IMG/VR virus record: IMGVR_UViG_3300042261_002390
Location: 62,001-126,000 of that record
Length of the DNA stretch: 64,000 nucleotides
Direction: 5' to 3' (one strand)
The notes beneath the pieces were generated by a model, which saw only the letters and a list, made by a program, of their open reading frames with translations, was not told where the DNA came from and ran no database searches. Positions 1-39,153 of the stretch are shown here, piece by piece; the first letter of the stretch is position 1; each line of letters starts with the position of its first letter. Position numbers and translations under genes: made by a program.

Positions 1-246
1 ATTACTAATGATTGGGATGAAGATTTTAAAGGATTTCACTATTACGATATTTCATTTGGATTTAATAATGTATTGAGTGGTAATAATATTGGTGTAACTA
101 CTGATATTAGAATATTACATCAATCAATTGGTATGGTTAACGAGCAGTGGGAAGAAAATAGAAAATTATTTATTAAAAAATATAAAAATTATTTGCCATA
201 TTCTATTAAATAAATATAAACATAAACTACTAATAACATATGAAGA

Positions 247-876
247 ATGATACAAGTAGATAAAATTGAAGACGGATTGCCAGTTAGTGTAATTGTTCCA
301 TTAAGTAAACAAAGAAAGGATTTTTTCGAGAATATGGTTCTACCATTGATTGAAGCAAATGGGGTTAATGAAATCATTATCAACGATGATGAGGGTTCAG
401 CACCTAAAAAAAGAAATGATGGTTTTAAACGTTCTACTCAACCATATGTGTTTTTTTGTGATGATGATATTTTATTGCCAGCAGACTATATTGGAGCATT
501 GTACGAAAAACTTGAAAATAATCCTGATGTTTCATTCGTATATACCGGATATCACGGAATAGTATTATACCCTGAAACACACCCAATGCGTGGAAATTTT
601 CAGATTCCTAATATTGAATTTAATAAGTCTGCATTAATGCAGGGAAATTATATTTCGACCATGACATTAATGCGCCGGGAAGTATTTCCGATGTTTGATG
701 AAAATTTAAAAAGATTACAGGATTGGGATGTCTTTTTAACTATTGTTAAAAATGGTGGCAAGGGAATGCTTGTGCCAAATCAGACATTTTATGCATATTA
801 TTTAGATTCTGGTATTACTTCAAACAACAATAATGAAATTGATGCAGTCTTTGCTATAAGAAAAAAACATTTTTAA
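247..876 (+). CDS. Glycosyltransferase family 2
   Basis: N-terminal VSVIVP strand, PKKRNDG, PYVFFCDDD (DxD), QDWD motif. Confidence 0.85.
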   Translation: MIQVDKIEDGLPVSVIVPLSKQRKDFFENMVLPLIEANGVNEIIINDDEGSAPKKRNDGFKRSTQPYVFFCDDDILLPADYIGALYEKLENNPDVSFVYTGYHGIVLYPETHPMRGNFQIPNIEFNKSALMQGNYISTMTLMRREVFPMFDENLKRLQDWDVFLTIVKNGGKGMLVPNQTFYAYYLDSGITSNNNNEIDAVFAIRKKHF

Positions 877-879
877 ATT

Positions 880-1815
880 GTGAAAAGGTCTAATATCAAT
901 AAAAAAGAATTAATTGCTAGAAAAATTAAATACAGACATGAACAAAATTTGTTTCTGAATAATATGAATGATAGAGATTTAAGACGATTTAATAAAATTG
1001 AACCAAAACCTGATGTAACCGGATTAAGTCGTGGGGATAGACGAAGTGGAAACTATTTGGATTTAGTTGAAAATAATTATATTAAAAAAGAAAATGTCGA
1101 TGTTGATATTGTAATTTGTATTCCATCACACGATAGATATGAAAAATTAAAAAGAATTATTGAACAAATAAAAGATTCTAATTCAAAATATAGTTATTTA
1201 ATTGTTATATTAAATGATGGGTCATCTGATGAAAGATATAATACGTTAGTTAATGAATACCCAAATATTATTCAGATAGTAAATAGCGTTCCGAATGGTA
1301 AAGCATTACACTGGTTTTGTTATAATCAAATGTGGAATGTTTTAAAAGGTTGTATTTGTCATGCTGTTTTACAAATGGATGATGATTTTATATTGTGTGA
1401 CAATTTTCTTGATATAATTGTTGATTTATTTTTTGAAAAGAAAAATGTTAATAGTAGAATTATGGCAATTTCACCTCATCTATGGTCATTTAAAAAAGCT
1501 TGTAAATATGAGTCGTGGTGGAATAGAAATGATTTGATTGATGGTATTGCATTGATTGATTATGATGTTATAAAATATTTGAATTTTGAATTACAGCCAG
1601 TAAATGCTAAGGATGTAATTAAACCGGGTGTACAAGTGAGAGCATGGACACAAATTTCTATGGGAATTAAAATGTATAGAGGCATTATTTTTAGAACATC
1701 CGAATCGTTGGTTTTCCATGACGGTAATGAAGATTCTAAATTACATGGTGATTTTAGAAAAGTAAAAAAAATATATACACATAATTTTATTAATAAAAAT
1801 ATTGAATATGATTAG
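880..1815 (+). CDS. GT-A fold glycosyltransferase with basic N-terminal extension
   Basis: IVICIPSHDR, ILNDGSSD, LQMDDDF motifs; GTG start. Confidence 0.75.
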   Translation: MKRSNINKKELIARKIKYRHEQNLFLNNMNDRDLRRFNKIEPKPDVTGLSRGDRRSGNYLDLVENNYIKKENVDVDIVICIPSHDRYEKLKRIIEQIKDSNSKYSYLIVILNDGSSDERYNTLVNEYPNIIQIVNSVPNGKALHWFCYNQMWNVLKGCICHAVLQMDDDFILCDNFLDIIVDLFFEKKNVNSRIMAISPHLWSFKKACKYESWWNRNDLIDGIALIDYDVIKYLNFELQPVNAKDVIKPGVQVRAWTQISMGIKMYRGIIFRTSESLVFHDGNEDSKLHGDFRKVKKIYTHNFINKNIEYD

Positions 1816-2542
1816 CATAATATTAAATGTTTATAAGAGACCATATATGTTGGAAAAACAGATTGAAGCAATAAAAAATCAATCAATATCCATTAAAAGT
1901 GAAAATATTCATGTTTGGTATAATAATGGCGATGTAGTTCAACATACTCCAAATGATAAAAATATAAAAACATATTTATGTAATTGGAATAGTAAGTTTT
2001 GGGGAAGATTTACACTTCCGTTGTTAATCAGAACACCATATGTTGCAATATTTGATGATGATATTATACCACAAAGGGATTGGTTAAAAAATTGTCTTGA
2101 AACAATTGAAAATCCCACATATAATGGAATTTTAGGTGGTAGCGGTGTAATACTTCGTGATAAATCATATGTGCCATTTAATAAGGTTGGTTGGAATGGT
2201 CAACACTTAAATACTGCAACCCGGGTTGATTTAGTTGGTCATGCTTGGTTTTTTAGACAAGAATGGGCTAAATATTTGTGGTATGAAGAACCTGTTAGCT
2301 GGGAAAACGGTGAAGATATTATGTTTTCGTATCTTGCACAAAAATATGGAAATATTAATACTTTTGTTCCTCCACATCCTGAAAATAATTTAAATTATTG
2401 GAGTTGTGATTTTAAGACTGGTAATGAAGTCGGTAGTGATGTTAATGCTTCGTGGCTTAAAGGTTCACATTATGAACAAAGAAATAAAATTTGTATCAAT
2501 TGTATAAATAATGGTTGGAAAACAGTAAATAATATTAAATGA
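1802..2542 (+). CDS. GT-A fold glycosyltransferase
   Basis: ISIILNVYKRP, YVAIFDDDIIP, GEDIMFSY. Confidence 0.75.
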   Translation: MNMISIILNVYKRPYMLEKQIEAIKNQSISIKSENIHVWYNNGDVVQHTPNDKNIKTYLCNWNSKFWGRFTLPLLIRTPYVAIFDDDIIPQRDWLKNCLETIENPTYNGILGGSGVILRDKSYVPFNKVGWNGQHLNTATRVDLVGHAWFFRQEWAKYLWYEEPVSWENGEDIMFSYLAQKYGNINTFVPPHPENNLNYWSCDFKTGNEVGSDVNASWLKGSHYEQRNKICINCINNGWKTVNNIK

Positions 2543-3228
2543 AAAATTTCAGAGAAGATATATTAATCTTATTTAACTTACTTAAAAATAAAACACCTTT
2601 TAGCTTTAGTAAATATGCTGATGGCGAATATGCAATATTAATAAACAAGCATATTACTAATTGTGATAATTGGACTTTTAATCCTGATATAGATAATATC
2701 TATCAGAATGAGTTGTTTAAATCATTTCAATTTAATGAAGATGGATATTATGTCGGTATATCATGTCCATGTTGTGTAAGTATGGATGATGTACTGTGGA
2801 TGAGAAATAATGTGGGTGTTGATAAAAATCATTTGACTTGGGCAAATATTTTTGTAAATGGTAATTATAGAACTTTTGTAAATCTATTTATACCTGAATT
2901 TAAAAATCATGATATTGTTTTAGTTGCAAACAAAAACGCTAATATTAATAATTTACCTTTTAATGTGGTTGAACACATACCTATTGGAAATACAGCATGG
3001 AAGGAAAATTTTAATTTAGTGAATGAATTACCTGAAAAAGATTATGAGAATAAATTATTTCTTTTTTGTGCAGGACCTCTTGGAAATATGCTTGCAGCTA
3101 AAATGTGGGAAAAAAATAAAAATAACATTTATATTGATATTGGGTCTACGTTAAATCCTTGGTTGGTTGGTAATAATAGAGGATATTTACGTGGTTCTGA
3201 TACACTAAATAAAATATGTATATGGTAG
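2539..3228 (+). CDS. Putative GT-D fold (DUF1792-like) glycosyltransferase
   Basis: SFSKYADGE resembles the RFGDGE motif; LFCAGP and IDIGS near the C-terminus; cluster context. Confidence 0.5.
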   Translation: MKNFREDILILFNLLKNKTPFSFSKYADGEYAILINKHITNCDNWTFNPDIDNIYQNELFKSFQFNEDGYYVGISCPCCVSMDDVLWMRNNVGVDKNHLTWANIFVNGNYRTFVNLFIPEFKNHDIVLVANKNANINNLPFNVVEHIPIGNTAWKENFNLVNELPEKDYENKLFLFCAGPLGNMLAAKMWEKNKNNIYIDIGSTLNPWLVGNNRGYLRGSDTLNKICIW

Positions 3229-3809
3229 AAATGAATAGTTTTAATGTTGTTGATTTTAGATTTGCTAAATCAACCGATGATTTTGATTTAAAATATAGAG
3301 CGTGGTCGAGAATATATGAATATCAATATGTTTTAGATTTCATTCGTAATACCCAAATAGAGTCCCCAAATATTCATAATTCTTCATGGGGTTATGAGGG
3401 TGTACACGTAATTTTTAGAGACGAATTGGATTTGATTGGTAAATGTACTCATTCAGATATTATTCATTCTGAATTTCGTGATACTTTTTATTATGATATT
3501 ACTACAGAGAATAATGAATTCGAAAATAAGTTCGATTTTGTTATAAATATCTCAACAATAGAACATTTAAAAACATCTGAAGATAGATTGACATCAATTA
3601 AGAACTTATTTAAACAAGTGAAGCCGGGTGGATATTTAATACTAACTTTTGACTATCCCCGGGTGAATTTGACTGAGATTGAGTTTTTAATTAATAAAAA
3701 ATGTACTCGTGGTGGAAATAAAGAGTTAAATGGGTCAAATTCAAAAATTGTTGACGAAAGGTATAAAGACTTAAATATAGTTTATTTAATATTGAAAAAA
3801 AATGAATAA
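3216..3809 (+). CDS. Class I SAM-dependent methyltransferase
   Basis: KFDFVINISTIEHL and VKPGGYLILTFD. Confidence 0.75.
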   Translation: MYMVEMNSFNVVDFRFAKSTDDFDLKYRAWSRIYEYQYVLDFIRNTQIESPNIHNSSWGYEGVHVIFRDELDLIGKCTHSDIIHSEFRDTFYYDITTENNEFENKFDFVINISTIEHLKTSEDRLTSIKNLFKQVKPGGYLILTFDYPRVNLTEIEFLINKKCTRGGNKELNGSNSKIVDERYKDLNIVYLILKKNE

Positions 3810-4362
3810 TTATTGGAATGATAGATATGTTGCCGGGGGTAATTCCGGGGCAGGTTCATATGGTGAATATGCTGTGCATAAGGCTGATGTGATTAATTAT
3901 TACATTGAAAAATATGAAATTAAAACCATATCGGATTTTGGATGTGGTGATGGTAATCAAATTAGTTTATTAACTGGATTTGAAAAATATGCTGGGTGTG
4001 ATATTTCTCCACGTATTATTGAAGTATGTAAGAAGAGGTTTGAAAACGATAAAAGATATTCGTTTTACGGTTATATTCACCAAATGCCTAGTGCTGACCT
4101 ATGTATGTCCCTTGATGTAATATATCACATTATGGATTATGGTGATTATGAAACGTATTTGGCTACACTGTTTGAAAAATCAGACAATTATGTATTAATT
4201 TTTTCATCAAATCATGATAGAAAAGTTGAGACTGTTTCTCACATACATCATAGGATTTTTACTAAGTTTGTCGATGAATTTGTGCCAAACTTTAAGCTTG
4301 TCGAGGAAATTGAAAATAACTTAAACACATCAGCGAAATTTTTTTTATACGAAAAAATATGA
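3802..4362 (+). CDS. Class I SAM-dependent methyltransferase
   Basis: DFGCGDG motif I, DLCMSLDVIYH, YWNDRY..GGNSGAGS N-terminus. Confidence 0.8.
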   Translation: MNNYWNDRYVAGGNSGAGSYGEYAVHKADVINYYIEKYEIKTISDFGCGDGNQISLLTGFEKYAGCDISPRIIEVCKKRFENDKRYSFYGYIHQMPSADLCMSLDVIYHIMDYGDYETYLATLFEKSDNYVLIFSSNHDRKVETVSHIHHRIFTKFVDEFVPNFKLVEEIENNLNTSAKFFLYEKI

Positions 4363-5369
4363 TACTAATTTCATACGGTACTCGCCCGGAGTACATCAAA
4401 CTTAAATCAATATTCAAGGAATTTGATAAAGTAGGTATTAAATATTGTACATTATTTACCGGGCAACATAAAGATTTACTTAACGAACATTCACCTACAA
4501 TATCGTTGAATATTGATGATAGTAGCAAAATTCTTGATAATAGATTAAATAATATTGTATCGTCCATAGTTAAAAGTAATTTTTTCTATAGTCTTAGTGA
4601 ATTTCCAACATATGTGATGGTAATGGGTGATACTACATCTGCAATGGCTGTTGCATTATCAGCATTCCATCACGGTATTAAAGTAATTCATCTTGAAGCC
4701 GGGTTAAGAACATATGATAATCAAAATCCATACCCTGAAGAAATTAATCGACGAATTATATCGCAAATCACTTCAATTCATCTATGCCCAACTAATTGGA
4801 ATCTTCAGAATTTAAAAAATGAGTCGATTATCATGGAAGAAGCATATGTTGTAGGTAATACTGTGATTGATAATTTATTAGATTACAAAGATAAATGTGA
4901 ATATACTAATAAAGTGTTGATTACACTCCATAGACGTGAAAATCATTCAATAATACGTGAATGGTTTAACGTTATTAACAATATAGCAAAAAATCATCCA
5001 GAAATCGAATTTATCCTCCCGATACATCCAAATCCTAGGGTTCAGGTTCACCGTAATATATTAACAAATGTTAACGTTATTGAGCCGCTTTCTTATGATG
5101 ATATGTTGAATTTATTGGTTAAAACTAAGCTTGTTATTACTGATAGTGGCGGGTTACAAGAAGAATGTAGTTTTTTTAATAAAAGATGTTTAGTCTGTCG
5201 TAAAACCACAGAAAGACCTGAAGCTATTGGATTAAGTAGTATTATGGTTGAAACACCATTATTGTTATCATTGTACTTTGATAAGTATATAAATAATTAC
5301 GAAATTGATTATAAATGTCCGTTTGGAGATGGATATGCAGCAGAAAAAATAGCGGAGATATTAAAATGA
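4359..5369 (+). CDS. wecB: UDP-N-acetylglucosamine 2-epimerase (non-hydrolysing)
   Basis: GTRPEYIK, TGQH, GDTTSA, HLEAGLRT, PEEINR, TLHRREN, TDSGGLQEE, PFGDG. Confidence 0.95.
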   Translation: MILISYGTRPEYIKLKSIFKEFDKVGIKYCTLFTGQHKDLLNEHSPTISLNIDDSSKILDNRLNNIVSSIVKSNFFYSLSEFPTYVMVMGDTTSAMAVALSAFHHGIKVIHLEAGLRTYDNQNPYPEEINRRIISQITSIHLCPTNWNLQNLKNESIIMEEAYVVGNTVIDNLLDYKDKCEYTNKVLITLHRRENHSIIREWFNVINNIAKNHPEIEFILPIHPNPRVQVHRNILTNVNVIEPLSYDDMLNLLVKTKLVITDSGGLQEECSFFNKRCLVCRKTTERPEAIGLSSIMVETPLLLSLYFDKYINNYEIDYKCPFGDGYAAEKIAEILK

Positions 5370-6127
5370 AAAGAGTATTAGTTATTGGTGATAGTTGTAC
5401 AGATATTTTTATATACGGTAAGTGTGATAGGTTATGCCCCGAAGCACCTGTACCAATTTTCATTCCCGAAAATACCGTTTACAATGGTGGTATGACAATT
5501 AATGTGTATGAAAATTTAAGAGCATTAGGTATATGTTGTGACATATTAACAAATGATATTAGACCTGTGAAGACAAGATATGTTGATTCTGTTTCGAATC
5601 AATTATTACTCCGGGTTGATGAAAAAGATGTTATTAGACGAATTAATCCTGCAGATTTATCACGTTTTAAGTTAGAAAATTATGATATAATAGTAATTAG
5701 CGATTATAATAAAGGATTTTTAACTATCGAAGATATTGAATATATTTCTGAAAGAAATAAAAATGTTTTTATTGATAGTAAGAAAAAATTCGCAGAATGG
5801 TGTCATCACATCAAGTTTATTAAAATAAATGAAAAGGAATATCTGTTGAATGAAAATTACCTAAAAAATGAATATTTTGGTAATTTAATTGTAACTAAGG
5901 GTAAAGATGGGGCAGTATTAAATAATGAGCAAGTATTTTCAATTGATGAAGAACATGATGTTAGAGATTTAAGTGGTGCTGGTGATACTTTTTTTGCAGC
6001 ATTAGTTGCAGATTATTTAAATAATAACGATATTTGTAGTGCAATTAAGTATGCAAATAAATGCGCATCATGGGCAGTTACGCAAAAAGGTGTTGTAAAA
6101 ATTGATTTAGATAAAGCCAAGATATGA
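5366..6127 (+). CDS. rfaE1: Heptose-7-phosphate kinase (PfkB family, HldE kinase-domain type)
   Basis: VIGD..D..G..RL.PEAPVP, SDYNKG, DLSGAGDTF. ATG at 5366 overlapping the wecB stop preferred over the 5315 start. Confidence 0.85.
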   Translation: MKRVLVIGDSCTDIFIYGKCDRLCPEAPVPIFIPENTVYNGGMTINVYENLRALGICCDILTNDIRPVKTRYVDSVSNQLLLRVDEKDVIRRINPADLSRFKLENYDIIVISDYNKGFLTIEDIEYISERNKNVFIDSKKKFAEWCHHIKFIKINEKEYLLNENYLKNEYFGNLIVTKGKDGAVLNNEQVFSIDEEHDVRDLSGAGDTFFAALVADYLNNNDICSAIKYANKCASWAVTQKGVVKIDLDKAKI

Positions 6128-6498
6128 TATATATATTAAACTCAGACGATTGTGAAAAAGTCCCTAAAAATTGGGGTGAAGAAATAATTCTTCACAATAG
6201 TGATAAATATTGTGGTAAACTACTGCGATTTAATCGTGGTGCTAAATTTAGCATGCATTTTCATATATTAAAGGAAGAAACTTGGTATATTAATAAAGGC
6301 GAATTTCAAATTAATTACATAAATCCTGAAAATGCCGATAAATTCAGTAAAATATTAACAGAAGGAATGGTTATTGAAATTGAAAAAGGAAATCCACATC
6401 AATTGATTGCATTGACTGATGGTGAAATTTTTGAAGTTTCAACCCAACATTTTGATGATGATAGTTATAGAATTGAAAAAGGAGATAGTCAATCATGA
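6124..6498 (+). CDS. Cupin-fold protein (sugar-phosphate isomerase-like)
   Basis: K.WG.E, SMHFH..KEETW, PHQL, EVST cupin motifs. Confidence 0.7.
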   Translation: MIYILNSDDCEKVPKNWGEEIILHNSDKYCGKLLRFNRGAKFSMHFHILKEETWYINKGEFQINYINPENADKFSKILTEGMVIEIEKGNPHQLIALTDGEIFEVSTQHFDDDSYRIEKGDSQS

Positions 6499-6926
6499 AT
6501 ATTTGGGTAAATGGGTGTTTTGATATATTACATCCCGGACATATTGATTTATTATGGTATGCTAAGTTATACAATACTGATAATGTGTCGTTAAAAGACG
6601 CAATGTCGGTAAATAGATTATATGTTGGCTTGGATAGTGATGAACGTGTTAAATTTTTAAAAGGCGATAAACGACCCATAAATGATATTGGCGTTCGTGT
6701 TAAAATGATGTCTAATTTAATTATGGTAGATTCAGTAGTTTCATTTTCTGATGAAGCAGAATTAGAATATTACATAAAAACATTTAACATTGATTATATG
6801 ATTATTGGTAATCAATATGTTGATAAATATATTGTGGGTGCTGAATTTGCTAAAAACGGTGTTGTTTATTATCCAGTTAATGAATATTCTACAACTAATA
6901 TTATCGATAAAATTAAAAATTTATGA
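6495..6926 (+). CDS. rfaE2: Heptose-1-phosphate adenylyltransferase (cytidylyltransferase-like)
   Basis: NGCFDILHPGH, GLDSD..V..LKG..RPI, YSTT. Confidence 0.85.
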   Translation: MNIWVNGCFDILHPGHIDLLWYAKLYNTDNVSLKDAMSVNRLYVGLDSDERVKFLKGDKRPINDIGVRVKMMSNLIMVDSVVSFSDEAELEYYIKTFNIDYMIIGNQYVDKYIVGAEFAKNGVVYYPVNEYSTTNIIDKIKNL

Positions 6927-7831
6927 TTATAGTTACTGGTGGTGAGGGGTTTATTGGTAAAAATTTAATTAAAATGCTTAAAGCATGCGGATATAATGAT
7001 GTGGTTTCTCTCGATATTATATCAAAATCACTTGATGATATTTATGAATTTTTATTTGATAATTCAGACAATATTGATTGCGTTTTTCATTTGGGTGCTA
7101 TTAGTGATACTACGGTATTCGATAAAAATATGTTGCATATTTATAACGTCTCCTCATCAATATTCATGTGGAATTTTTGTTCATTAAAAAAAATACCTTT
7201 AATATACGCTAGTTCTGCAGCCACTTATGGTGATGGTAGTAATGGATTTGATGATGAATCATCTATTGATGTATTAAAACCATTGAATCCTTATGGTAAT
7301 TCAAAACAAGAATTTGATATGTGGATATTGAAGACACGTAGCCGACCACCATATTGGTATGGATTAAAATTTTTTAATGTTTATGGATTTGGCGAAGCAC
7401 ACAAAGGTAGAATGGCATCTATGGTATATCATTCGTTTAATCAAATAGAGTGCACTGGTATGATTAAATTATTCAAATCACATAATCCAAATTTTGAGGA
7501 TGGTGGACAATCAAGAGATTTTATTTACATTGATGATGTGGTAAATGTCTGTATTAATGTGATGAAAAATAAACCAGAATCTGGTATTTATAATGTAGGT
7601 ACGGGTAAAGCACGTAGTTTTAATGATTTAGCTAAAGCAGTTTTTAATTCTCTTGGAATTCAAGAAAATATTATATATATTGACACACCCATTGATATTA
7701 GAGATAAATATCAGTATTTTACTGAGGCAAATATCAATAAATTAATAAAAAGTGGTTGTAGTGTTAATTTTCATGAGTTAGAAGATGGAATTTTAAAATA
7801 TATTAATATGTTGAAATATGAAAATAGCTAA
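6923..7831 (+). CDS. hldD: ADP-L-glycero-D-manno-heptose 6-epimerase
   Basis: IIVTGGEGFIG, FHLGAISDT, YASSAATYG, PLNPYG.SK, GLKFFNVYG..E.HKGRMAS, RDFIY, YQYFTEA. Confidence 0.92.
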   Translation: MIIVTGGEGFIGKNLIKMLKACGYNDVVSLDIISKSLDDIYEFLFDNSDNIDCVFHLGAISDTTVFDKNMLHIYNVSSSIFMWNFCSLKKIPLIYASSAATYGDGSNGFDDESSIDVLKPLNPYGNSKQEFDMWILKTRSRPPYWYGLKFFNVYGFGEAHKGRMASMVYHSFNQIECTGMIKLFKSHNPNFEDGGQSRDFIYIDDVVNVCINVMKNKPESGIYNVGTGKARSFNDLAKAVFNSLGIQENIIYIDTPIDIRDKYQYFTEANINKLIKSGCSVNFHELEDGILKYINMLKYENS

Positions 7832-8453
7832 CATCGTTTATGAAAAGAATCTGGTAAATCATACCAAAGTAGATTACGTTAATTACATTAATGATGCTGT
7901 AAAATATGTAAATCTTGACACTTCGTTACCCACATTATATGTTGGTTGGTCATTTATGAAGCAATGTAATCCTGATAATGAGATTATCCAAAATGCTAAT
8001 ATTTTATATAAAAAAATAATCACAAATGAACTGTATTGGGAATTTAGTTTTGACGAAAGCAAACCATCTCATGTAAAGGGAGTTGAATTATTTGTTAACA
8101 ATACTCCTAATTTTTATTTTTCATCAAAATATCAATATATTAATTTAGACCCGGTATTCTTTCAATTAGCTTATATTGAGGATTTAATGTATGTAATTCC
8201 AAAACAAATTGATTCTATATATGTGTATAAGAATGAGATGGTATATATATTGTTTGAAAATAAAATATGGGGCATTAATTTAAAAATGTATGAATTTTTT
8301 AAGTTTAATATTGATGAAATATTGAAAAACTTAATGGAAAGAACTACACACTCAAAAGTTGACGATACCGGAGAAATATTCCAGAAATACTACAAAATAT
8401 TCCCTAATTATATTCACTTAAAAAGATATATTGTTACAATTTTGACAAAATGA
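7818..8453 (+). CDS. Hypothetical protein
   Basis: 211-aa ORF overlapping the hldD stop; no recognisable motif. Confidence 0.7.
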   Translation: MKIANIVYEKNLVNHTKVDYVNYINDAVKYVNLDTSLPTLYVGWSFMKQCNPDNEIIQNANILYKKIITNELYWEFSFDESKPSHVKGVELFVNNTPNFYFSSKYQYINLDPVFFQLAYIEDLMYVIPKQIDSIYVYKNEMVYILFENKIWGINLKMYEFFKFNIDEILKNLMERTTHSKVDDTGEIFQKYYKIFPNYIHLKRYIVTILTK

Positions 8454-20314: not shown

Positions 20315-20335
20315 AGGAAACTGATTGTTATTTCA

Positions 20336-20408
20336 GTACAATTAACTCAGTGGGTAGAGTATTTGCCTATCAAGCGAAACGCCGTTGGTTCAAATCCAGC
20401 ATTGTAAA
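20336..20408 (+). tRNA. Atypical tRNA, anticodon ATC (Asp-like), possibly non-functional
   Basis: Cloverleaf: GTACAAT/ATTGTAA (1:72 mismatch), D ACTC/GAGT, anticodon TTTGC-CTATCAA-GCGAA, T GTTGG-TTCAAAT-CCAGC; no CCA. Confidence 0.7.
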
Positions 20409-20448
20409 ACAATAGATAACAAACGAAATATCCTTTTTAAAAATATAT

Positions 20449-20532
20449 TGTGGGATAGTGTAATTGGTAACATATTGGGCTCATAACCCAAAGACAGTAA
20501 TGCTAGTGAAGGTTCGATTCCTTCTCCCGCTA
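20449..20532 (+). tRNA. tRNA-Met(CAT), initiator-type, with 16-nt variable region
   Basis: 1:72 mismatch, anticodon stem TTGGG/CCCAA with three G-C pairs, loop CTCATAA, T arm GAAGG-TTCGATT-CCTTC. Confidence 0.85.
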
Positions 20533-20580
20533 CCGGGGTCATTTTTGAAATTACAAGTATTTATATGAAAAATATAAATC

Positions 20581-31447: not shown

Positions 31448-34400
31448 ATGTCTATTGAAACTAAACTAAATTTAACCAATGACAAGTTTTGTCAGACTGA
31501 TGGTAGTTTATTAACATTATCAGGTGATACTCAAATTTCTAGTGTTGGTACAATAAAATATGAAACGAATCAAAGTAGTACATATACTTCTCGTTCATTG
31601 ACTGATGCTGGATATGTAACAGGATTAACTAAACAATTATGTACTACCGCAAATAATGGTATTACTAAAACTGATTGTAATTTTCATCTTGGTGGGGCAT
31701 TAACAGGTGACACATTTATTAGTGGAAATTATTCATTGAATATTTGTGGTAGTGCAAAATTAAATTCAAATAACGGATATCAGATTAATAATAATACTGT
31801 TTTAAATTCACCAAGTAATGATTATAATTCAATATTTGTTGGTATAAATGCAGGTGCTACCGGAAACACCGGAAATAATGATATTGCTATTGGCGCATAT
31901 ACTTTACGTAAATTAGTTTTTGGTGCTGGTGGTGGTCATAATGTCGCTATCGGTTCTCAGAACTTATGTAATAGTGCTGATGGTTGCAATAATGTTGCAA
32001 TTGGTACTAGTGTGATGTCAGCGTCATGTACTGGTTCATATAATATTGGTATTGGTAGTCAATCGTTGACACGAAATTGTGGAAGCTATAATATTGGTTT
32101 AGGTGTATCTTCGTTGTTATGCAATAGAACTGGTGAATGTAATATTGGTATTGGTTTAGAATCATTAAAATTAAATTTCTATGGTTGCCAAAATATCGCT
32201 ATTGGTAATCAAACATTGTGCACTAATAGTTGTGGTAATAATAATATTGCTATTGGTCTAGGTGCTGGTTTTAGTGCTACTGGTAATAGTAGCGTGTTTA
32301 TTGGTAAAAATGCTGGTTATTACGAAACTGGTTCTGATAAATTGTATATTGGAAATAGTCAAACACAGAGTTTAATTTATGGCGATTTTTTAAATAATTT
32401 TGTGACTTTACCAACATTAAAGCTTTGTAGTACACCGGGAATAGGTACTACATCCGATAATATTCTTGTATGGAATTCTAGCGATAAGTGTGTAAAAATA
32501 GTTAGTGGTGGTGCTGTATTAACGTCAGCAATTACTGGTGCTACTAACGGATTGACAAAGACTGGTCAAAATGTTAAATTAGGTGGTATTTTAACAGGTG
32601 ATACAATAATTTATGGAAATTCAAAATCACTGTCTTTAGGAACATGTGATTGCATAATTAATGCATTTAATGTGAACTCAGGTTCGGCAAATATTCGCCC
32701 AACAGGTGCATTAACACTATATGGTGCAACTATATCGATTAATAATTTTGCTTCATATGATTGTAATTATTGCTGTTCATTTAGTAAATATTCATTAGTT
32801 GATAAGAATTATGTTACCGGAACAACAATCTCAACAGCAAATAATGGATTAACTTCAAATAATAGAAACATACGTTTGGGTGGAACTATTACTGGTGATA
32901 CATGTATTACTTATAATAATGCTAAATTAGCTTTCTGTACCGAAGGTGGTGCATGTAATATAAGTTTATGTAATTTAGGTAGTGAAGTTAAATTATCTTC
33001 ACGATGTGCTTATATGATTAGTACGTCGGTGGATAGTTGTCAAAGTAATGTTGGTGTGAAAAATGGTTGTGTTGATATTTTTTCTAATATCAGCGAATGT
33101 GGCGTTCAAATTACTGCACCAACAACAGGTGCTGTTTATATTGCTGATTATAGCAGTGGTTTTGTCAACGAATCTTTAGTGAGTAAAAGATATGTTACTG
33201 GTTTAACTACTACGTCTGGTGTACAATCAGCTAATAATGGCTTAACCAAATCAGGTACAAATGTTCGTTTAGGTGGTACATTAACCGGGAATACTGTAAT
33301 TGATGGAGCATATTCATTAGGATTTAATAATTCGATTATTAATCTTACTGGTAGTAGTTGTGTTAATTTAAGTGGTGTTGTAAATTTAATTACAACCCCG
33401 GCAGTAGGTAGTACTTCAGATAATATTCTTGTTTGGAATTCAGGGGATAAGTCAATTAAAACGGTGAGTGGTGGTGCTGTATTAACATCAGCAATCACTG
33501 GTGCTACAAATGGATTGTCAAAAACAGGTCAAAATGTTAAATTAGGTGGTACTTTAACAGGTAATACTACAATCGGTGGGTCTAGTACTTTATGTATTAC
33601 TGCGCCAAGTATCAGCACAGATGTTCAACATTTGACATTCGATTCGAATCCAATTACACCGACAGCATTTGGTTCGTTATTTTATAAAAATAATTCATTA
33701 AATTTCAATAGAGAATTTAGTGGAGTTACATTACAAATTGGTGAAGAAACAGTTGTTAGGGTAACAAATACAACTGGTTCATTAATTGAAAATGGTAGTG
33801 CAGTTTATATTTGTGGTGCTGTGAGTGGTATTCCTGCTATTGCAAAAACGATTGCAAGTTCAAGTAGCAATGCAGTTAATACATTGGGTTTAACTACAAT
33901 GGGAATATCTGATAATAATGAAGGATATGTTACTATATTGGGACTTGTGCATGATATTGATACTTCATCGTGGAGTGCTGGTAGTAGAATTTACTTATCA
34001 TCGACACAAGCTGGTTGTTTAACTGCAACAGCACCATCATATCCAAATGAAGTAATTCATATTGGATATGTTACATGTCAAGATGTATTAGGGTCGATTT
34101 TAGTTGCGCCTGTTATTGAAACATCATATACTAGTATTAGTACATTTACTGGATACACTGCAAGTACGGCTATTGTATTGAACAATAAATTGGATAACTG
34201 CATTTTTAATAATTATACTGGTGCGACTTCAAGCACACTTGATTATTTATTGGATGTTAGTAGTTTTGCTGTTACTGGTGCGACTAATGGATTGAGTAAG
34301 TCAGGTGTTCGTGATGTTTGTCTTGGTGGAACAATATCAAATCCAGTTACTATTTGTGGTGCTAGTTCAGTTAAAATTGGTGATACTAATGGTATTACAT

Positions 34401-37400
34401 TAAGTACATCCAATACTAACGATATTGCCCTCAATTCTAAATCATGTGGTGGAATTTATATTAAATCACAATCAGGCACTAGTAATTCAACAGTTAGTTT
34501 TGTTGGTTCTGTTGGGTTGCAAGTTGATTATGACGCTGTTAATGGTTTTGCATTATATGATAATAGGGTTGGTGCTAGTCGAACTGGTTTAGTGTATGCT
34601 GATGATTATAGCTCAAATTATGTGAATCGTTCATTAGTAGATAAAGCTTATGTGGATAGTGTTGCGACTGGTTTAGATGTTAAGTCTGCAGCATTGGTTA
34701 GTACAACCACAAATATTACATTAAGTGGTTTAACTACTGTTGATGGCATAACGTTAACGACAGGCGATAGAATTTTAGTCAAAGACCAAATAAATGGTGC
34801 TTTGAATGGTATATATAGTGCTAGTACTGGTACTTGGGGTCGTACTAGTGATTATGATTTTTCACCAAGTGGTGAAATTAGTAATGGTAACCTAATCCCC
34901 GTAACAAGTGGTAATACAAATGGTAATAGTATTTGGATATTAACAACGCCTAACCCAATAGTGAGTGGAGATACATTAATTTTTTCTAAATTCTCACAAC
35001 AAGCAGGAATTATTGAGGGTAATGGTATTAATGTAACGACTGTTGGTACAAATAAACAAATTTCAGTAGAGTTGCCCCCAAGTGCATGTGGTTTACAATT
35101 TAATGGTACTGGTTTAGAAGTTGATTACGATATTTTCCGTTTAGGTTTATGTTCTGCAACAGGTGGATATGTGGATATTAGAGCAACTAAAGGCGTTGCA
35201 AGTGGAAATGAGATTCCTGTGAAAATTAACACTGGTGGAACTAATTCATTATATGTAGATTCTTCATCTGTAATTACTTGCATTGGCAATCCTGTGTTAT
35301 CTGCAAATAATGGATTGAATAAGATTGGCTGCAATGTACGCTTAGGTGGGACATTGACAGGTGCTACAACAATTAATGGTGGAACTAATGCTTTGACATT
35401 CTGTTGTGTCTGTGCATTGGGAATTGGATATACTACAAGTGCAACAATTACAGATGCGAATGCAACACCAAGAGGGTTGGTATATGCTGGAAATTATTCA
35501 GCAACATATTGTGACCGTTCGTTAGTCGATAAAGGATATGTTGATAGTTTGGTAACATCAGGCGTATTAGCTTGTAACGGTTTAAGTAAAGTGGGAAATA
35601 CTGTTATTTTAGGCGGTGCATTAACCGGAAATACTTTTATTAGTTATGGTGCAAATAGGTTGTGTTTCATTGATGGCGGTACTTCATGCATGGATATTAT
35701 TTCTGATTGTAGCCAAATTCATGTTCAAAACACTTCATTGTGTTTAAGAAGTTGTACATTAGGTTCTTGTGTTGGTACGGTTTGTCTTACAAATTCAGGT
35801 ATTATATCTATTTCAAGTAATGCTACAAATTGTGGTGTTAGGGTAACATCACCATCGACTGGTGCTATTTATAGCGCAGATTATAGCGGTAATTTTATTA
35901 ATGAATCATTAGTAACTAAAAGGTATGTTACTGGTATAACTAGCTCAATATGTAGTAATTATTTATGTAGTGCAAATAATGGTTTAACTAAGTCTGGAAC
36001 TAATGTTCGTTTAGGTGGTGCATTAACAGGAAACACTGCAATTACTGGTGCATATACTTTAAGTATTTGTGGTGGCGCTAAATTAAATACTGCTTGCGGA
36101 TATCAAATTAGTGGTAGTACCGTATTAAGAACAAGTCCTAATTCAATTAATAATATTTTGATTGGAGAGTCTGCAGGCAATAGTACGATGACTGGCACTA
36201 ATAACTTTGTAGTAGGATGTCAAGCTCTTTTAAGTAACACAACTGGCTATAATAACATCGCTAATGGTTATTTAGCACTTAATAAAAACACAATCGGTTA
36301 TAATAATATTGCCAACGGTAATGGTGTACTTTATGCTAACACAATTGGTTGTAATAATATTGCCAATGGTTATAATGCTCTTTACTGTAATATTTGTGGT
36401 AATGGAAATATTGTCAATGGTTATAGTGCACTTTTTAATAATACAACTGGTTGTGATAATATTGCTAATGGCTTTATAGCACTAGCTATGAATATAAATG
36501 GTTCTAATAATATTGCCAATGGTTATTATGCTCTTTATAATAATACTACTGGTTCTAACAACATTGCTAGTGGCTGTCAAGCATTATATTGCAATACAAC
36601 TGCCAACAATTTAATTGCAATTGGTATAAATGCTTTATATAATAACAAATGTATTAATGCTAGTTGTAATGGTCAATATAATATTGCTGTTGGTCACGGC
36701 TCATTAAGTGGAAATACTTATGGCTGTGCAAATTATGCTTTTGGTTATGGTGCGTTAAGCGGGAATACATATGGTTGCTATAATATTGCAAATGGTTATC
36801 AAACACTTGCGAAAAATACAACAGGCAGTGACAATATTGCAATTGGGTATCAGAGTCTTTATTCGAATACCGGAGGTACTGCTAATATTGCAATCGGCTC
36901 ATCTGCCTTAAAATCAAATACAAAGGGTTTAGATAATATTGCAATTGGTTGCATTTCATTGAATGCAAATACTTTGGGATGTTTTAATACTGCAATAGGT
37001 GGTTATTCATTGAATGCAAATACTATCGGTAATTTTAATATTGCTGTGGGTAATTCTGCACTTATGTGCAATACGTGTGGTTGCAATAATACTGCATATG
37101 GTTATTCTGCTCTTGGTCTTAATAGCTCAGGATGTAATAATCTTAGTTTTGGATTCAGCAGTAATTTAATGAATACTACGGGAAATAATAACATTGGATT
37201 GGGATATCGTGCAGGATATTCTAATTCTACTGGCTCAAATAATATATTTATCGGAACGTGTGCAGGTTATAATGAAACAGGTTCTGGTAAATTATACATT
37301 GCTACAGGTGCAACAAATCAATTAATATATGGTGATTTTGCCACTAAAGAAGTAACATTGCCTAAACTTAAAGTTTGTGAAACACCTGCCACTGGAAGTT

Positions 37401-38241: not shown

Positions 38242-39153
38242 ATGAAAAAAGATTCAACAATCCAACCTAGCGATAAATTTGTGATTTTACATACCGAGGG
38301 TGGACACGGTAAACAAATTATGGCAACTGCAGTATGTCGTGCAATAAAAAAAGCATATCCTGATAGAAAATTAATAGTTGTTACTGCTTGGGATGGACCT
38401 TTTTTTTACAATCCAGATGTTTGGCGTTTTTATACTTTTAATCAAATGCAATATTTCTTTGATGATTTTGTTAATGAAGATACTAAAATTTTTAGGCATG
38501 AAGTATATCATAGTGAAGACCATATCCTTCAAAGAAAACATTTAACTCAATCTTGGTGTGATATGTATGGCATTCCGTATGATGGCTATAAGCCAAAGAT
38601 TTATTTAAACCCAAGAGAACTTGAAATAGCTAGGGATAAAATAAAACCAGATGGTAAGCCTATTATGTTGTTACAAACTCATGGTGGTTCGCCTAATGGA
38701 CAATATTCAAAAAAATCTTGGTTTAGAGATATGCCTGTTGAAATTGCCCAAAAATTAGTTAACTATTTTAATAAATCATATCGCATATTACATATTAAAA
38801 CTCCTGAACAACCAGAATTGCAGGGAGTTGAGATGCTAAATTTGCCGTTCAGAGAATTATATGCTGTGTTTCCTCTTTCAACCAAAAGATTATTTATTGA
38901 TAGTTTTGCACAACATGTTGCAGCAGCATTGGATTTGGAAAGTACTGTGGTTTGGATTGGTAATAAACCTGAAATATTTGGTTATTCTGAGCATATTAAT
39001 ATACAGCCAAATGCTAATTATGTGAGGGAACTGAATAAGTTCAGTTATCTTGACCAATTTGATATTTCAGGTCAGATACAACAATTTCCTTATGATACAA
39101 TAAATTTGTTTGATATTAATAAAATTATTGAAGCAGTAAATAAACAAAAGTAA
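38242..39153 (+). CDS. GT9-like (heptosyltransferase-like, GT-B) glycosyltransferase
   Basis: GGHGKQIMATAVCRAIKKAYPDRKLIVVT resembles the GT9 N-terminus; FIDSFAQHVAAALD resembles DSG..HLAAA. Confidence 0.6.
   Translation: MKKDSTIQPSDKFVILHTEGGHGKQIMATAVCRAIKKAYPDRKLIVVTAWDGPFFYNPDVWRFYTFNQMQYFFDDFVNEDTKIFRHEVYHSEDHILQRKHLTQSWCDMYGIPYDGYKPKIYLNPRELEIARDKIKPDGKPIMLLQTHGGSPNGQYSKKSWFRDMPVEIAQKLVNYFNKSYRILHIKTPEQPELQGVEMLNLPFRELYAVFPLSTKRLFIDSFAQHVAAALDLESTVVWIGNKPEIFGYSEHINIQPNANYVRELNKFSYLDQFDISGQIQQFPYDTINLFDINKIIEAVNKQK

What the first reader, a model, noticed from the sequence alone, without database searches (positions are those of the whole stretch)
247..7831. Phage ADP-heptose pathway plus glycosyl- and methyltransferases, with a GT9-like enzyme parked among the fibre genes
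Seen: four GT-like ORFs, two SAM methyltransferases, wecB, heptose kinase, adenylyltransferase and hldD in one overlapping-gene operon, plus a GT9-like ORF (38242-39153) between two fibre genes. Established: GT9 enzymes use ADP-heptose, and bacterial AAH/TibC heptosylate Ser/Thr-rich adhesins. Inference: the phage heptosylates, and possibly methylates, glycans on its own S/T-rich virion fibres, or remodels the host surface.
Basis: partly seen in the sequence, partly recalled or inferred. Interest (0 to 1): 0.7.

Follow-up and report, generated by a model that had tools for sequence, protein, structure and literature searches.

The report
Jumbo phage heptose-glycan island
A freshwater jumbo phage encodes its own route to the bacterial sugar ADP-heptose, a set of sugar-adding and methylating enzymes, and a heptosyltransferase-like enzyme lodged among its tail-fibre genes; these most likely coat its own fibres, or else its host's surface, with a strain-specific glycan.

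Summary
Window 1-8453 is a tightly overlapping + strand operon that starts 473 bp upstream of the window. ORF 38242-39153 has no Pfam hit. It folds (pLDDT 95.8) into a GT-B enzyme whose only close structural relatives are GT9 heptosyltransferases (Z 19-23, against 11 for other GT-B).

The genome is a ~340-kb freshwater jumbo phage. In relatives the operon is one allele of a hypervariable glycan island. HldD and the cupin occur in 4 of 19 relatives. The GT9-like gene, by which those relatives were found, nearly always sits in the variable fibre cluster. A distant phage group joins fibre, GT9-like gene, cupin, mini-HAD, HldC, HldA and HldD in one operon.

GmhA is absent. Cupin-HldE-GmhB-HldD clusters without GmhA recur in bacterial MAGs, so the cupin is probably the sedoheptulose-7-phosphate isomerase.

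The acceptor is unresolved. I favour fibre or decoration proteins with Ser/Thr linkers (~0.45). Host-envelope remodelling is the main rival (~0.3). DNA glycosylation is unlikely.

The parts
1..213 (+). 3' end of the first island gene, a GT-A glycosyltransferase (PF13712 Glyco_tranf_2_5). The full gene is G000 61527-62213. It is conserved at 47-66% identity in relatives as the island's left-hand anchor.
247..876 (+). GT2 glycosyltransferase, 209 aa, no hydrophobic segment
880..1815 (+). GT2 glycosyltransferase, 311 aa
1802..2542 (+). GT2 glycosyltransferase, 246 aa
2539..3228 (+). GT-D-fold glycosyltransferase, 229 aa. No Pfam hit. Its nearest ESM Atlas clusters are 79-100% viral and carry PF08759 or PF22882.
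3216..3809 (+). SAM-dependent methyltransferase, 197 aa
3802..4362 (+). SAM-dependent methyltransferase, 186 aa
4359..5369 (+). WecB, non-hydrolysing UDP-GlcNAc 2-epimerase (makes UDP-ManNAc)
5366..6127 (+). [quoted passage not shown] The ORF opens at 5315, but the ATGA overlap with the WecB stop at 5366 gives the 253 aa seen in relatives.
6124..6498 (+). Metal-binding cupin of the type II phosphomannose-isomerase kind, 124 aa. Proposed sedoheptulose-7-phosphate isomerase standing in for GmhA.
6495..6926 (+). [quoted passage not shown]
6923..7831 (+). HldD, ADP-glyceromanno-heptose 6-epimerase, 302 aa
7818..8453 (+). Conserved 211-aa protein of unknown function. It is the right-hand boundary of the island in relatives (37-66% identity) and overlaps the HldD stop.
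31448..38110 (+). 2220-aa fibre-like virion protein (PHROG tail spike / virion structural protein), 23% Ser+Thr
38242..39153 (+). GT9-like GT-B glycosyltransferase, 303 aa (P0001). Found at 57-88% identity across relatives of the jumbo lineage, nearly always within the variable fibre cluster.
39242..41299 (+). 685-aa fibre with a weak C-terminal Peptidase_S74 (intramolecular chaperone) match
41299..43008 (+). 569-aa protein with five poly-Ser/Thr tracts (mucin-like linkers) between globular domains (P0272). Candidate O-glycosylation substrate.
43078..46977 (+). 1299-aa fibre-like virion protein

Best explanation
Window 1-8453 is the heptose allele of a hypervariable glycan-biosynthesis island. 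The island belongs to a lineage of aquatic jumbo phages of about 325-370 kb.

SHOWN BY HOMOLOGY
- An HldA-like kinase and an HldC-like adenylyltransferase supply its substrate.
- WecB makes UDP-ManNAc.
- Four GT2-type enzymes, one GT-D enzyme and two SAM methyltransferases are encoded with them. All are soluble.

INFERRED
- The PMI-type cupin converts sedoheptulose-7-phosphate to D-glycero-D-manno-heptose-7-phosphate, the GmhA step.
- The 7-phosphatase step is left to a host enzyme in this phage. Relatives carry a 95-101-aa mini-HAD between the cupin and HldC.
- The conserved GT9-like enzyme encoded among the fibre genes (38242-39153) transfers heptose from ADP-heptose. That ADP-heptose is phage-made here and host-made in relatives without the module.
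- The island's transferases and methyltransferases build a methylated oligosaccharide containing heptose and ManNAc in the cytoplasm.

MOST LIKELY ACCEPTOR (INFERRED)
The phage's own fibre and decoration proteins, including three proteins with mucin-like Ser/Thr linkers. This would give each phage strain its own virion glycan.
For: PATHWAY
- HldD scores above its equivalog cut-off and aligns full-length with E. coli HldD.
- For the kinase and the adenylyltransferase the best families by far are the two HldE domains.
- WecB scores above its cut-off.

CUPIN
- The metal ligands H45, H47, E52 and H92 are invariant in 32 homologues.
- The 17 best Swiss-Prot structural matches are all the C-terminal phosphomannose-isomerase cupin of ManC/RfbM/XanB/AlgA. 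They have rmsd 1.4-2.4 A over 110-117 residues.
- The cupin co-occurs with HldD in 4 of 19 related records and is absent from the other 15.
- In genome and MAG contigs it lies beside HldE-, GmhB- or HldD-like genes in 15 of 35 loci. No GmhA homologue lies nearby in any of them.
- 7 of 12 such genomes have no GmhA at all.

MINI-HAD
- It carries a DIDGTIC motif. It sits between the cupin and HldC in L006, L097, L098 and L068.

GT9-LIKE ENZYME
- The model has pLDDT 95.8.
- The 30 best PDB matches are all GT9 enzymes.
- VIA-align gives Z 23.1, 20.7, 20.0 and 19.3 for 3tov, WaaF, TibC and WaaC. Other GT-B enzymes reach Z 11.
- hhalign to WaaF has probability 88.7%. It covers the donor-domain motif, where D220-S221...H225 matches the GT9 D-S/T-G..H motif.
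- One operon joins a fibre gene, the GT9-like gene, a sulfotransferase, an APS kinase, the cupin, the mini-HAD, HldC, HldA and an HldD-like gene in L068, L069 and L088.

FIBRE LINK
- 41 of 44 loci in the jumbo lineage have a homologue of the window's fibre proteins within two genes of the GT9-like gene.
- 42 of 44 have an ORF of at least 500 aa there, against 29% of genes in the genome at large.
- In Pelagibacter phage HTVC112P the homologue gp49 directly follows tail fibre gp48.

CYTOPLASMIC ACCEPTOR
- No multi-spanning membrane protein (Wzx, Wzy, ligase, transporter or initiating transferase) lies inside the islands of eight relatives. None of the operon's own products has a hydrophobic segment.

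CANDIDATE SUBSTRATES
- Only 3 of 285 predicted proteins have poly-Ser/Thr tracts. One lies two genes after the GT9-like gene.

VARIABILITY
- The island interior differs in every complete relative examined, between the conserved p1078-p104-GT2_5 genes and the 211-aa gene.
Against: - No glycan has been observed, and the acceptor is inferred only from gene position and protein composition.
- The heptose module is missing from 15 of 19 relatives that keep the GT9-like gene. The enzyme therefore does not depend on the phage pathway, and its donor is unproven.
- P0001 itself does not reach the Pfam GT9 model.
- By alignment offsets, the GT9 catalytic Asp (WaaC D13, TibC D110) falls on an invariant Gly-Lys (G23-K24) of a GGxGK loop. 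Such glycine-rich loops bind acceptor phosphates in some other GT-B enzymes (my own knowledge), which would fit a lipid-linked or nucleotide acceptor.
- The kinase and the adenylyltransferase score below their curated cut-offs.
- No 7-phosphatase is encoded in the operon.
- Poly-Ser/Thr proteins are not a constant neighbour of the GT9-like gene in relatives.
- Some of the MAG contigs that carry cupin clusters may be misbinned phage DNA.
Confidence: 0.45

Rival explanations
1. Host-envelope remodelling. The island and the GT9-like enzyme act on host lipid-linked glycans (LPS core, O-chain or capsule precursors) during infection. This would change the cell surface so that other phages cannot co-infect, or so that progeny do not stick to lysed cells.
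For: - Most characterised GT9 enzymes heptosylate the LPS inner core. The closest solved structures include WaaC and WaaF.
- Members of the GT9-like family occur fused to GT25, an LPS-type family.
- The same reading has been published for pelagimyophage host-recognition clusters, which mix tail fibres, glycosyltransferases and rfaE (PMC7029224).
- Soluble transferases could use the host's own flippase and ligase.
- The GGxGK loop could bind a phosphorylated acceptor (inference).
Against: - Two complete relatives have direct terminal repeats, which fits a virulent jumbo phage. Lasting seroconversion therefore brings little benefit.
- No membrane-machinery gene lies in any island examined.
- The GT9-like gene is tied to fibre genes in three unrelated phage groups.
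- The phage encodes proteins with mucin-like linkers, which are classic O-glycan carriers.
- The N-terminal acceptor domain shows no sequence similarity to WaaC or WaaF.
Confidence: 0.3
2. Metabolic support only. The heptose genes are auxiliary metabolic genes that keep the host's ADP-heptose and LPS synthesis running during a long infection. The GT9-like enzyme is then functionally unrelated to the operon and uses another donor.
For: - The heptose module and the GT9-like gene are 30 kb apart here.
- Most GT9L-bearing relatives lack the module.
- Viral heptose genes are usually filed as auxiliary metabolic genes.
Against: - The module is translationally coupled to five transferases and two methyltransferases in one operon.
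- It is fused into one operon with the GT9-like gene in L068, L069 and L088.
- The island is hypervariable like a glycan-structure locus, not conserved like a metabolic booster.
Confidence: 0.12
3. DNA hypermodification. The sugars are attached to hydroxymethylated bases of the phage DNA, as in phages that make heptosyl-5hmC.
For: - Phage gene clusters that put mono- and di-heptose on 5hmC are known (bioRxiv 10.1101/2023.12.21.572611).
- The phage does seem to invest in DNA modification: a QueC-like gene lies at 59021-59848.
Against: - The 246-kb record has no TET/JBP dioxygenase and no C5 cytosine methyltransferase.
- Its single thymidylate-synthase-family protein passes the ThyA equivalog. 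It keeps Asn in the PYNMASY motif, where dCMP hydroxymethylases have Asp (the Asn/Asp rule is my own knowledge).
- The known DNA heptosylation used a T4 beta-GT-like enzyme and a HAD/APH plus cytidylyltransferase route, not HldA/HldC/HldD.
- Six or more transferases and two methyltransferases exceed any known DNA glycan.
- About a quarter of the genome is missing from the record, so absence is not proof.
Confidence: 0.05

Closest known systems
[quoted passage not shown]
   Same: - HldD is an equivalog-level match.
- The kinase and the adenylyltransferase are separate HldA- and HldC-type proteins.
- The nucleotide and the stereochemical outcome are expected to be the same.
   Different: - There is no SIS-type GmhA. 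A PMI-type cupin occupies its place in the gene cluster.
- There is no GmhB here. Relatives have a 95-101-aa mini-HAD.
- The pathway is encoded by a virus, inside a glycosyltransferase operon.
GT9 heptosyltransferases WaaC/WaaF and the autotransporter heptosyltransferases TibC/AAH (BAHT family)
   Same: - GT-B fold with Z 19-23 to these structures only.
- Conserved donor-domain motif D-S...H.
- Like tibC-tibA and aah-aidA, the gene sits next to genes for large, Ser/Thr-rich, repetitive surface proteins.
   Different: - 9-14% sequence identity in the structural alignments.
- The Pfam GT9 model is not reached.
- The N-terminal domain is unrelated in sequence.
- An invariant Lys stands where the catalytic Asp is expected.
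- There is no iron-binding cysteine cluster and none of the extra length that TibC carries.
- The nearest relatives found in the ESM Atlas are almost all viral.
Host-recognition clusters of pelagimyophages (Zaragoza-Solas et al. 2020, PMC7029224)
   Same: - Aquatic phages with T4-type genes.
- Hypervariable regions mix tail-fibre genes with glycosyltransferases and LPS-sugar genes, including rfaE.
- A 149-kb marine virus record holds a 39%-identical homologue of the GT9-like protein.
   Different: - Here the sugar island and the fibre cluster are two separate loci with defined conserved borders.
- The genome is more than twice as large.
- The full HldA-cupin-HldC-HldD set and the GT9-like family were not described there.
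- Those authors favoured host O-chain modification.
Mycobacteriophage virion glycosylation (Freeman et al. 2023, as cited in PMC12619734)
   Same: - Phage-encoded glycosyltransferases in or next to the structural gene modules.
- Glycans on virion proteins made in the cytoplasm.
   Different: - Those glycans sit on capsid and tail-tube C-termini.
- No nucleotide-sugar pathway, heptose or GT9-like enzyme is involved there (my recollection).
- Here nothing has been measured.
Clade-specific glycosylation gene clusters of giant viruses (Mimivirus fibrils, chlorovirus capsid; from my own knowledge)
   Same: The virus encodes its own nucleotide-sugar pathways, transferases and sugar methyltransferases, in clusters that differ between strains. 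They decorate fibres on the particle.
   Different: - Those are eukaryote-infecting viruses with different sugars and enzymes.
- No GT9 enzyme is involved.
Phage DNA sugar hypermodification clusters (Pyle et al., bioRxiv 10.1101/2023.12.21.572611)
   Same: A phage GT-B enzyme plus a phage-encoded heptose activation route.
   Different: - The acceptor there is 5hmC, made by a methyltransferase plus a TET-like dioxygenase. Neither is found here.
- The enzymes are different: a HAD/APH fusion, a cytidylyltransferase and a T4 beta-GT-like transferase.

Membership tests
[quoted passage not shown] | HldD: ADP-glyceromanno-heptose 6-epimerase | tested here: met
   TIGR02197 scores 327.7 bits against a cut-off of 274.6. 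The protein is 34% identical to E. coli HldD over 302 aa, with the Y-x-x-x-K motif aligned.
[quoted passage not shown] | HldA / HldE N-domain: heptose-7-phosphate 1-kinase | tested here: inconclusive
   The best family is TIGR02198 (E 1.3e-36, 126 bits), but its cut-off is 345. The next family, ribokinase, scores E 2e-11.
[quoted passage not shown] | HldC / HldE C-domain: heptose-1-phosphate adenylyltransferase | tested here: inconclusive
   The best family is TIGR02199 (E 6.8e-25, 87.6 bits), but its cut-off is 181.5.
[quoted passage not shown] | GmhA: SIS-fold sedoheptulose-7-phosphate isomerase | tested here: not met
   TIGR00441 has no match in the 246-kb record. No GmhA homologue lies beside the cupin in 35 genome loci. 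The cupin is proposed as an analogue.
[quoted passage not shown] | GmhB: heptose-1,7-bisphosphate 7-phosphatase | tested here: not met
   TIGR00213 has no match. The mini-HAD of relatives is absent. There is only a weak HAD-like match (E 0.03) at G000 128134-128259.
CAZy GT9 / Pfam PF01075 | GT-B fold closest to solved GT9 structures | tested here: met
   The top 30 Foldseek matches are all GT9 enzymes. VIA-align Z is 19-23 for them and 11 for other GT-B enzymes.
CAZy GT9 / Pfam PF01075 | Sequence reaches the Pfam GT9 model | tested here: not met
   P0001 has no hit, and PF01075 has no match anywhere in the record. Six of 73 family members match weakly, the best at E 4.7e-4.
CAZy GT9 / Pfam PF01075 | C-terminal donor-binding motif D-(S/T)-G-x-x-H | tested here: met
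   hhalign to E. coli WaaF has probability 88.7% and aligns the IDSFAQH motif with NDSGLMH. D220, S221 and H225 are nearly invariant in 73 sequences.
CAZy GT9 / Pfam PF01075 | N-terminal catalytic Asp (WaaC D13, TibC D110; residue numbers from my own knowledge) | tested here: inconclusive
   From the alignment ranges (model residue 12 = WaaC residue 1; model residue 11 = TibC residue 96), the Asp falls on G23-K24-Q25. K24 is invariant and no acidic residue is conserved nearby. No residue-level superposition was available.
CAZy GT9 / Pfam PF01075 | Uses ADP-heptose as donor | not testable with these tools
   The only evidence is gene linkage with HldA, HldC and HldD in L068, L069 and L088.
BAHT (TibC/AAH) protein heptosyltransferases | Iron-binding cysteine cluster and dodecameric assembly | tested here: not met
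   P0001 has two cysteines (C32, C106). It has 303 aa and aligns only to TibC residues 96-387. The oligomeric state was not tested.
BAHT (TibC/AAH) protein heptosyltransferases | Gene adjacent to its large Ser/Thr-rich surface-protein substrate | tested here: met
   41 of 44 loci in the jumbo lineage have a homologue of the window's fibre proteins within two genes. The same adjacency is seen in L068 (fibre with S74 chaperone) and in HTVC112P (gp48-gp49).
BAHT (TibC/AAH) protein heptosyltransferases | O-heptosylation of Ser/Thr on the substrate protein | not testable with these tools
   The complex-prediction run of P0001 with P0272 gave no answer.
Type II phosphomannose isomerase cupins | Cupin fold with a His-His-Glu-His metal site | tested here: met
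   The model has pLDDT 93.7. The top 17 Swiss-Prot matches are PMI domains of ManC/AlgA/XanB. H45, H47, E52 and H92 are invariant.
Type II phosphomannose isomerase cupins | Aldose-ketose isomerase activity on a manno-configured sugar phosphate | not testable with these tools
   Inferred from the fold, and from gene clusters that have HldE, GmhB and HldD but no GmhA.
Phage DNA sugar hypermodification | Enzyme that makes 5-hydroxymethylpyrimidine in DNA or in the nucleotide pool | tested here: not met
   There is no TET/JBP and no C5 methyltransferase. The thymidylate-synthase homologue is ThyA-like. The record is 75% complete.

The most novel reading that the evidence does not exclude
A widespread lineage of aquatic jumbo phages dresses its tail fibres with strain-specific, methylated, heptose-containing O-glycans. 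A phage-specific GT9-like enzyme would start or extend them, as a viral counterpart of TibC/AAH. The heptose would come from a GmhA-independent pathway in which a phosphomannose-isomerase-type cupin and a mini-HAD phosphatase replace GmhA and GmhB. The same pathway variant also operates in bacteria that lack GmhA, such as Saccharibacteria.
Probability: 0.3. Interest if true: 0.75.

Novelty: new variant of a known kind. Interest (0 to 1): 0.62.

Why it matters
- Virion glycans. If the glycan is on the virion, protein glycosylation by phages extends beyond mycobacteriophages to abundant environmental jumbo phages. A hypervariable glycan island beside a hypervariable fibre cluster would mean these phages diversify a sugar coat as bacteria diversify O-antigens. 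That bears on host recognition, protease resistance and decoy avoidance.

- The cupin. Whatever the acceptor, the cupin finding is directly testable. A second, non-homologous sedoheptulose-7-phosphate isomerase would correct pathway predictions in genomes that appear to lack GmhA. Examples are the candidate phyla radiation genomes that have HldE, GmhB and HldD.

- The GT9-like family. It has 725 cluster representatives and at least 564 viral loci. It gives a named fold and a likely donor to a common phage protein of unknown function.

Tried and rejected
- Megablast of the operon against deposited phages found no match.
- Pfam and PHROGs gave nothing for 38242-39153. NCBIfam gave only a 47-residue match at E 1.3e-3.
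- Searches of the record for GmhA, GmhB and Pfam GT9 found nothing.
- A search for the relatives' mini-HAD in this genome found nothing in the operon. The only hit is a weak HAD-like match (E 0.03) at G000 128134-128259.
- The 211-aa protein after HldD has no family, no Atlas lead and no structure. It is a conserved lineage gene and I treat it as the island's border, not as an enzyme.
- A profile of the GT9-like family against PDB sequences gave only E 0.09 to WaaF. Structure was needed.
- A profile of the cupin against PDB sequences gave only generic cupins. The Foldseek PDB list is also generic. Only the Swiss-Prot model library singled out PMI domains.
- Complex prediction of the GT9-like enzyme with the poly-Ser/Thr protein returned no answer (score 0.00). 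This is neither support nor evidence against.
- The T4 late-promoter motif TATAAATA is not enriched (27 found, 21 expected), so expression timing could not be read from the sequence.
- The first related-loci run with the 73-sequence alignment failed for lack of a conserved stretch. A 10-sequence alignment worked.
- The mycobacteriophage glycosylation paper could not be read.
- I considered and dropped an RmlC-type sugar-nucleotide epimerase role for the cupin. Its invariant metal ligands and its PMI-domain neighbours argue against it, though a CapF/WbcJ-like role on a nucleotide sugar is not excluded.

Full report
WHAT THE WINDOW IS
The window is G000:C1:62001-126000 of a 246-kb IMG/VR virus record, estimated 75% complete. 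The same HldD protein is also seen on a 339,914-bp contig. GC content is about 30%. Near-identical DNA occurs in freshwater and lake metagenomes. Relatives found through the fibre-cluster enzyme include complete genomes of 325-370 kb, two of them with direct terminal repeats. The phage has a T4-type baseplate protein, PhoH, a RecA/UvsX-like protein, DnaB, SNF2 and PolB. It is therefore a jumbo tailed phage with T4-type baseplate and replication genes. The 'provirus' label is probably an artefact of its bacterial-looking sugar genes.

THE OBSERVATION
Thirteen co-directional genes run from G000 61527 (window -473) to window 8453. Adjacent genes mostly overlap by 4-14 nt, and a few have short gaps. 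In order they are:
- a PF13712 GT-A transferase;
- three GT2 enzymes;
- a 229-aa protein with no Pfam hit, which the ESM Atlas places in the GT-D fold (TM 0.85-0.93, mostly viral clusters);
- two SAM methyltransferases;
- WecB, above its equivalog cut-off;
- a PfkB kinase whose best family is the heptose-7-phosphate kinase domain of HldE;
- an adenylyltransferase whose best family is the second HldE domain;
- HldD, above its equivalog cut-off and 34% identical to E. coli HldD;
- a conserved 211-aa protein of unknown function.

The kinase probably starts at 5366, where its ATG overlaps the WecB stop. That start gives the 253 aa seen in relatives. None of these proteins has a hydrophobic segment. 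The record has no SIS-type GmhA, no GmhB and no Pfam GT9 match.

THE FIBRE-CLUSTER ENZYME
ORF 38242-39153 (P0001) is invisible to Pfam and PHROGs. It belongs to a large family: 725 representatives at 50% clustering and at least 564 loci in IMG/VR.

With a 73-sequence alignment AlphaFold gives a model of pLDDT 95.8.
- The 30 best Foldseek matches in the PDB are all GT9 enzymes: a Veillonella GT9, WaaF, WaaC and TibC, with E 3e-13 to 3.5e-7.
- VIA-align gives Z 23.1, 20.7, 20.0 and 19.3 for these. Unrelated GT-B enzymes reach only Z 11.
- A profile comparison with E. coli WaaF has 88.7% probability over the C-terminal, donor-binding domain. It aligns the nearly invariant D220-S221...H225 with the GT9 motif D-S-G-x-x-H.

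Three differences from known GT9 enzymes matter.
- The N-terminal acceptor domain has no detectable sequence similarity to WaaC or WaaF.
- From the alignment offsets, the GT9 catalytic Asp would fall on an invariant Gly-Lys of a GGxGK loop.
- The protein has only two cysteines and lacks the extra length that TibC has beyond the aligned core, so it is not a BAHT-family member.

The nearest Atlas clusters are 89-100% viral. Some carry the Pfam GT9 domain, and some are fused to GT2 or GT1/GT4 domains. Other family members are fused to FkbM methyltransferase or GT25 domains.

COMPARATIVE CONTEXT OF THE ISLAND
In eight relatives at least 91% complete, the same conserved genes bracket the locus. On one side are a 1078-aa protein, a 104-aa protein and the PF13712 transferase. 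On the other is the 211-aa protein (in G009 the locus was fetched from the 211-aa match, but that gene was not recalled by my ORF finder). The 8-13 kb between them differ in every genome.

One island (G003) has a PseB/CapD-type dehydratase, an RmlD-like reductase, other methyltransferases and other GT2 enzymes. Of the heptose set it retains only the kinase. No island contains a multi-spanning membrane protein.

The heptose module is accessory. HldD and the cupin occur together in 4 of 19 GT9L-bearing records and in 2 of the 10 that are at least 90% complete. Both are absent from the rest. Closer relatives of this phage (81% HldD identity) keep kinase-cupin-HldC-HldD-211aa while swapping the upstream transferases and methyltransferases.

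COMPARATIVE CONTEXT OF THE GT9-LIKE GENE
Within the jumbo lineage the gene stays 57-88% identical, while its neighbours change in size and sequence.
- 41 of 44 loci have a homologue of this phage's fibre proteins within two genes.
- 42 of 44 have an ORF of at least 500 aa there, against 29% of genes in the genome at large.

In a second, distant group (41-48% identity) the order is: large fibre, a small ORF of about 112 aa, the GT9-like gene, a sulfotransferase.

In three loci of that group the operon continues with an APS kinase, the cupin (55-60% identical to this phage's), a 101-aa HAD phosphatase, HldC, HldA and an HldD-like epimerase. The fibre there is 2017 aa and ends in a Peptidase_S74 chaperone domain.

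In Pelagibacter phage HTVC112P the homologue gp49 directly follows the tail fibre gene gp48.

These three independent adjacencies are the best evidence that the enzyme's function is tied to fibres. The single-operon arrangement is the best evidence that it uses the heptose pathway's product.

THE CUPIN
- H45, H47, E52 and H92, the classic cupin metal ligands, are invariant in 32 homologues, as are several basic residues.
- The model (pLDDT 93.7) matches best the C-terminal phosphomannose-isomerase cupin of the bifunctional ManC/RfbM/XanB/AlgA enzymes. These take 17 of the top 17 Swiss-Prot matches, with rmsd 1.4-2.4 A.
- GmhA's reaction is the seven-carbon counterpart of the phosphomannose isomerase reaction (established chemistry, my own knowledge).
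- In genome and MAG contigs from many phyla the cupin lies beside HldE-, GmhB- or HldD-like genes in 15 of 35 loci, never beside a GmhA homologue.
- Of 12 such genomes, seven have no GmhA at all, among them two Saccharibacteria. Four have a strong GmhA elsewhere.
- Relatives also carry a 95-101-aa HAD with a DIDGTIC motif between the cupin and HldC. This completes a five-enzyme set.

I therefore propose that the cupin is a non-homologous sedoheptulose-7-phosphate isomerase. I found no paper in the held library that links a cupin to GmhA.

Caveats:
- Some MAG contigs may be misbinned phage DNA, and MAGs are incomplete.
- A CapF/WbcJ-like role on a nucleotide sugar is not excluded.
- This phage lacks the mini-HAD, so the phosphatase step would fall to the host.

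THE ACCEPTOR
This is the weak link.

For virion proteins:
- the fibre linkage described above;
- the absence of any export or lipid-carrier machinery in the islands;
- a GT-D enzyme, whose founding member works on a serine-rich adhesin (my own knowledge);
- only 3 of 285 predicted proteins have mucin-like poly-Ser/Thr linkers. One (41299-43008) lies two genes after the GT9-like gene. A second shares its C-terminal domain. The third has leucine-rich-repeat-like sequence (by eye).

For the host envelope:
- the usual substrates of GT9 enzymes;
- the GT25 fusions in the family;
- the possible phosphate-binding loop;
- the published reading of pelagimyophage host-recognition clusters, which mix fibres, transferases and rfaE (PMC7029224).

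DNA glycosylation with heptose exists in phages. Here I found no TET/JBP and no cytosine methyltransferase, and only a ThyA-like thymidylate synthase. The enzyme types also differ from the known DNA system.

The fold of the enzyme with the linker protein gave no answer.

VERDICT
- The sequence observation is confirmed and extended.
- The pathway assignment is solid for HldD and WecB, good for the kinase and the adenylyltransferase, and inferential for the cupin.
- The GT9-like fold is established. Its donor and acceptor are not.
- I rate virion glycosylation at about 0.45, host-envelope remodelling at about 0.3, metabolic support only at about 0.12 and DNA modification at about 0.05.

In kind, this is a new variant of things already known: phage glycan genes in host-recognition regions, phage virion glycosylation, and GT9/BAHT heptosyltransferases. 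It has two new and testable elements. One is a GmhA-free ADP-heptose route. The other is a large phage-specific GT9-like family anchored in fibre clusters.

Noticed in passing
window 59021-59848 (+): QueC-like PP-loop ATPase (PF06508, E 1.3e-6) between an SNF2 helicase (56841-58676) and the family B DNA polymerase (59866-63567). It may point to 7-deazaguanine modification of the phage DNA, which would be separate from the sugar island.
   Followed up: partly
L068 7445-8716 (also L063-L088): In a distant phage group the GT9-like gene is followed by a ~270-aa gene (268-281 aa) in most loci (next gene in 19 of 26). Only the L068 copy was scanned, and it is a PAPS-type sulfotransferase (PF13469, E 1.5e-18). 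In L068, L069 and L088 a 145-149-aa ORF follows (APS kinase fold in L068). This suggests a sulfated glycan next to a giant tail fibre.
   Followed up: partly
L097 2256-3392 (-) and L098 2249-3400 (-): In two complete relatives the cupin gene is a 378-383-aa ORF. The L097 copy has an HNH endonuclease domain in the middle, which looks like a mobile-element or intein-type insertion into the pathway gene.
   Followed up: partly
window 8464, 11530, 12997, 19618, 20557, 25169, 39213, 43051, 53071, 63577 (+): The motif GTATTTAT(A) occurs 14 times on the coding strand and 3 times on the other (17 found, 10 expected). Most intergenic copies lie about 20-40 nt upstream of a start codon, a few further away. 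The downstream genes include fibre genes 39242 and 43078. A variant, CTATTTATA, precedes the GT9-like gene. It is a candidate phage promoter element. None lies upstream of the sugar operon inside the window.
   Followed up: partly
window 19643-21249 and 55931-56773 (-): Two paralogous GIY-YIG/NUMOD3-like endonuclease genes (19643-20314, 20581-21249) flank tRNA-Asp and tRNA-Met (20336-20534). A third GIY-YIG gene on the minus strand is among the very few reverse-strand ORFs in the window.
   Followed up: partly
window 21250-22349: A 1.1-kb stretch without an ORF of 100 aa or more contains two sub-threshold tRNA-like matches (21458-21511 and 21694-21766, 26.7 and 28.8 bits against a gathering score of 29). 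They may be decayed or unusual tRNA genes.
   Followed up: partly
G000 147491-148687 and 154866-156665 (outside the window): These are the only two other proteins in the genome with long poly-Ser/Thr linkers. By eye, one carries leucine-rich-repeat-like sequence. The other shares a ~105-aa C-terminal domain with the window's 569-aa linker protein and follows a 1560-aa protein.
   Followed up: partly
whole record G000: IMG/VR labels the record a provirus. Relatives are 325-370-kb genomes, two of them with direct terminal repeats, so the label is probably a trimming artefact caused by bacterial-like sugar genes.
   Followed up: partly
L120, L126 (genome contigs): Contigs of 335 kb and 357 kb, filed in Neomarinimicrobiota and Comchoanobacterales MAGs, carry cupin-HldE-HldD-GmhB clusters. 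Their size is that of jumbo phages, so they may be misbinned phage genomes.
   Followed up: no
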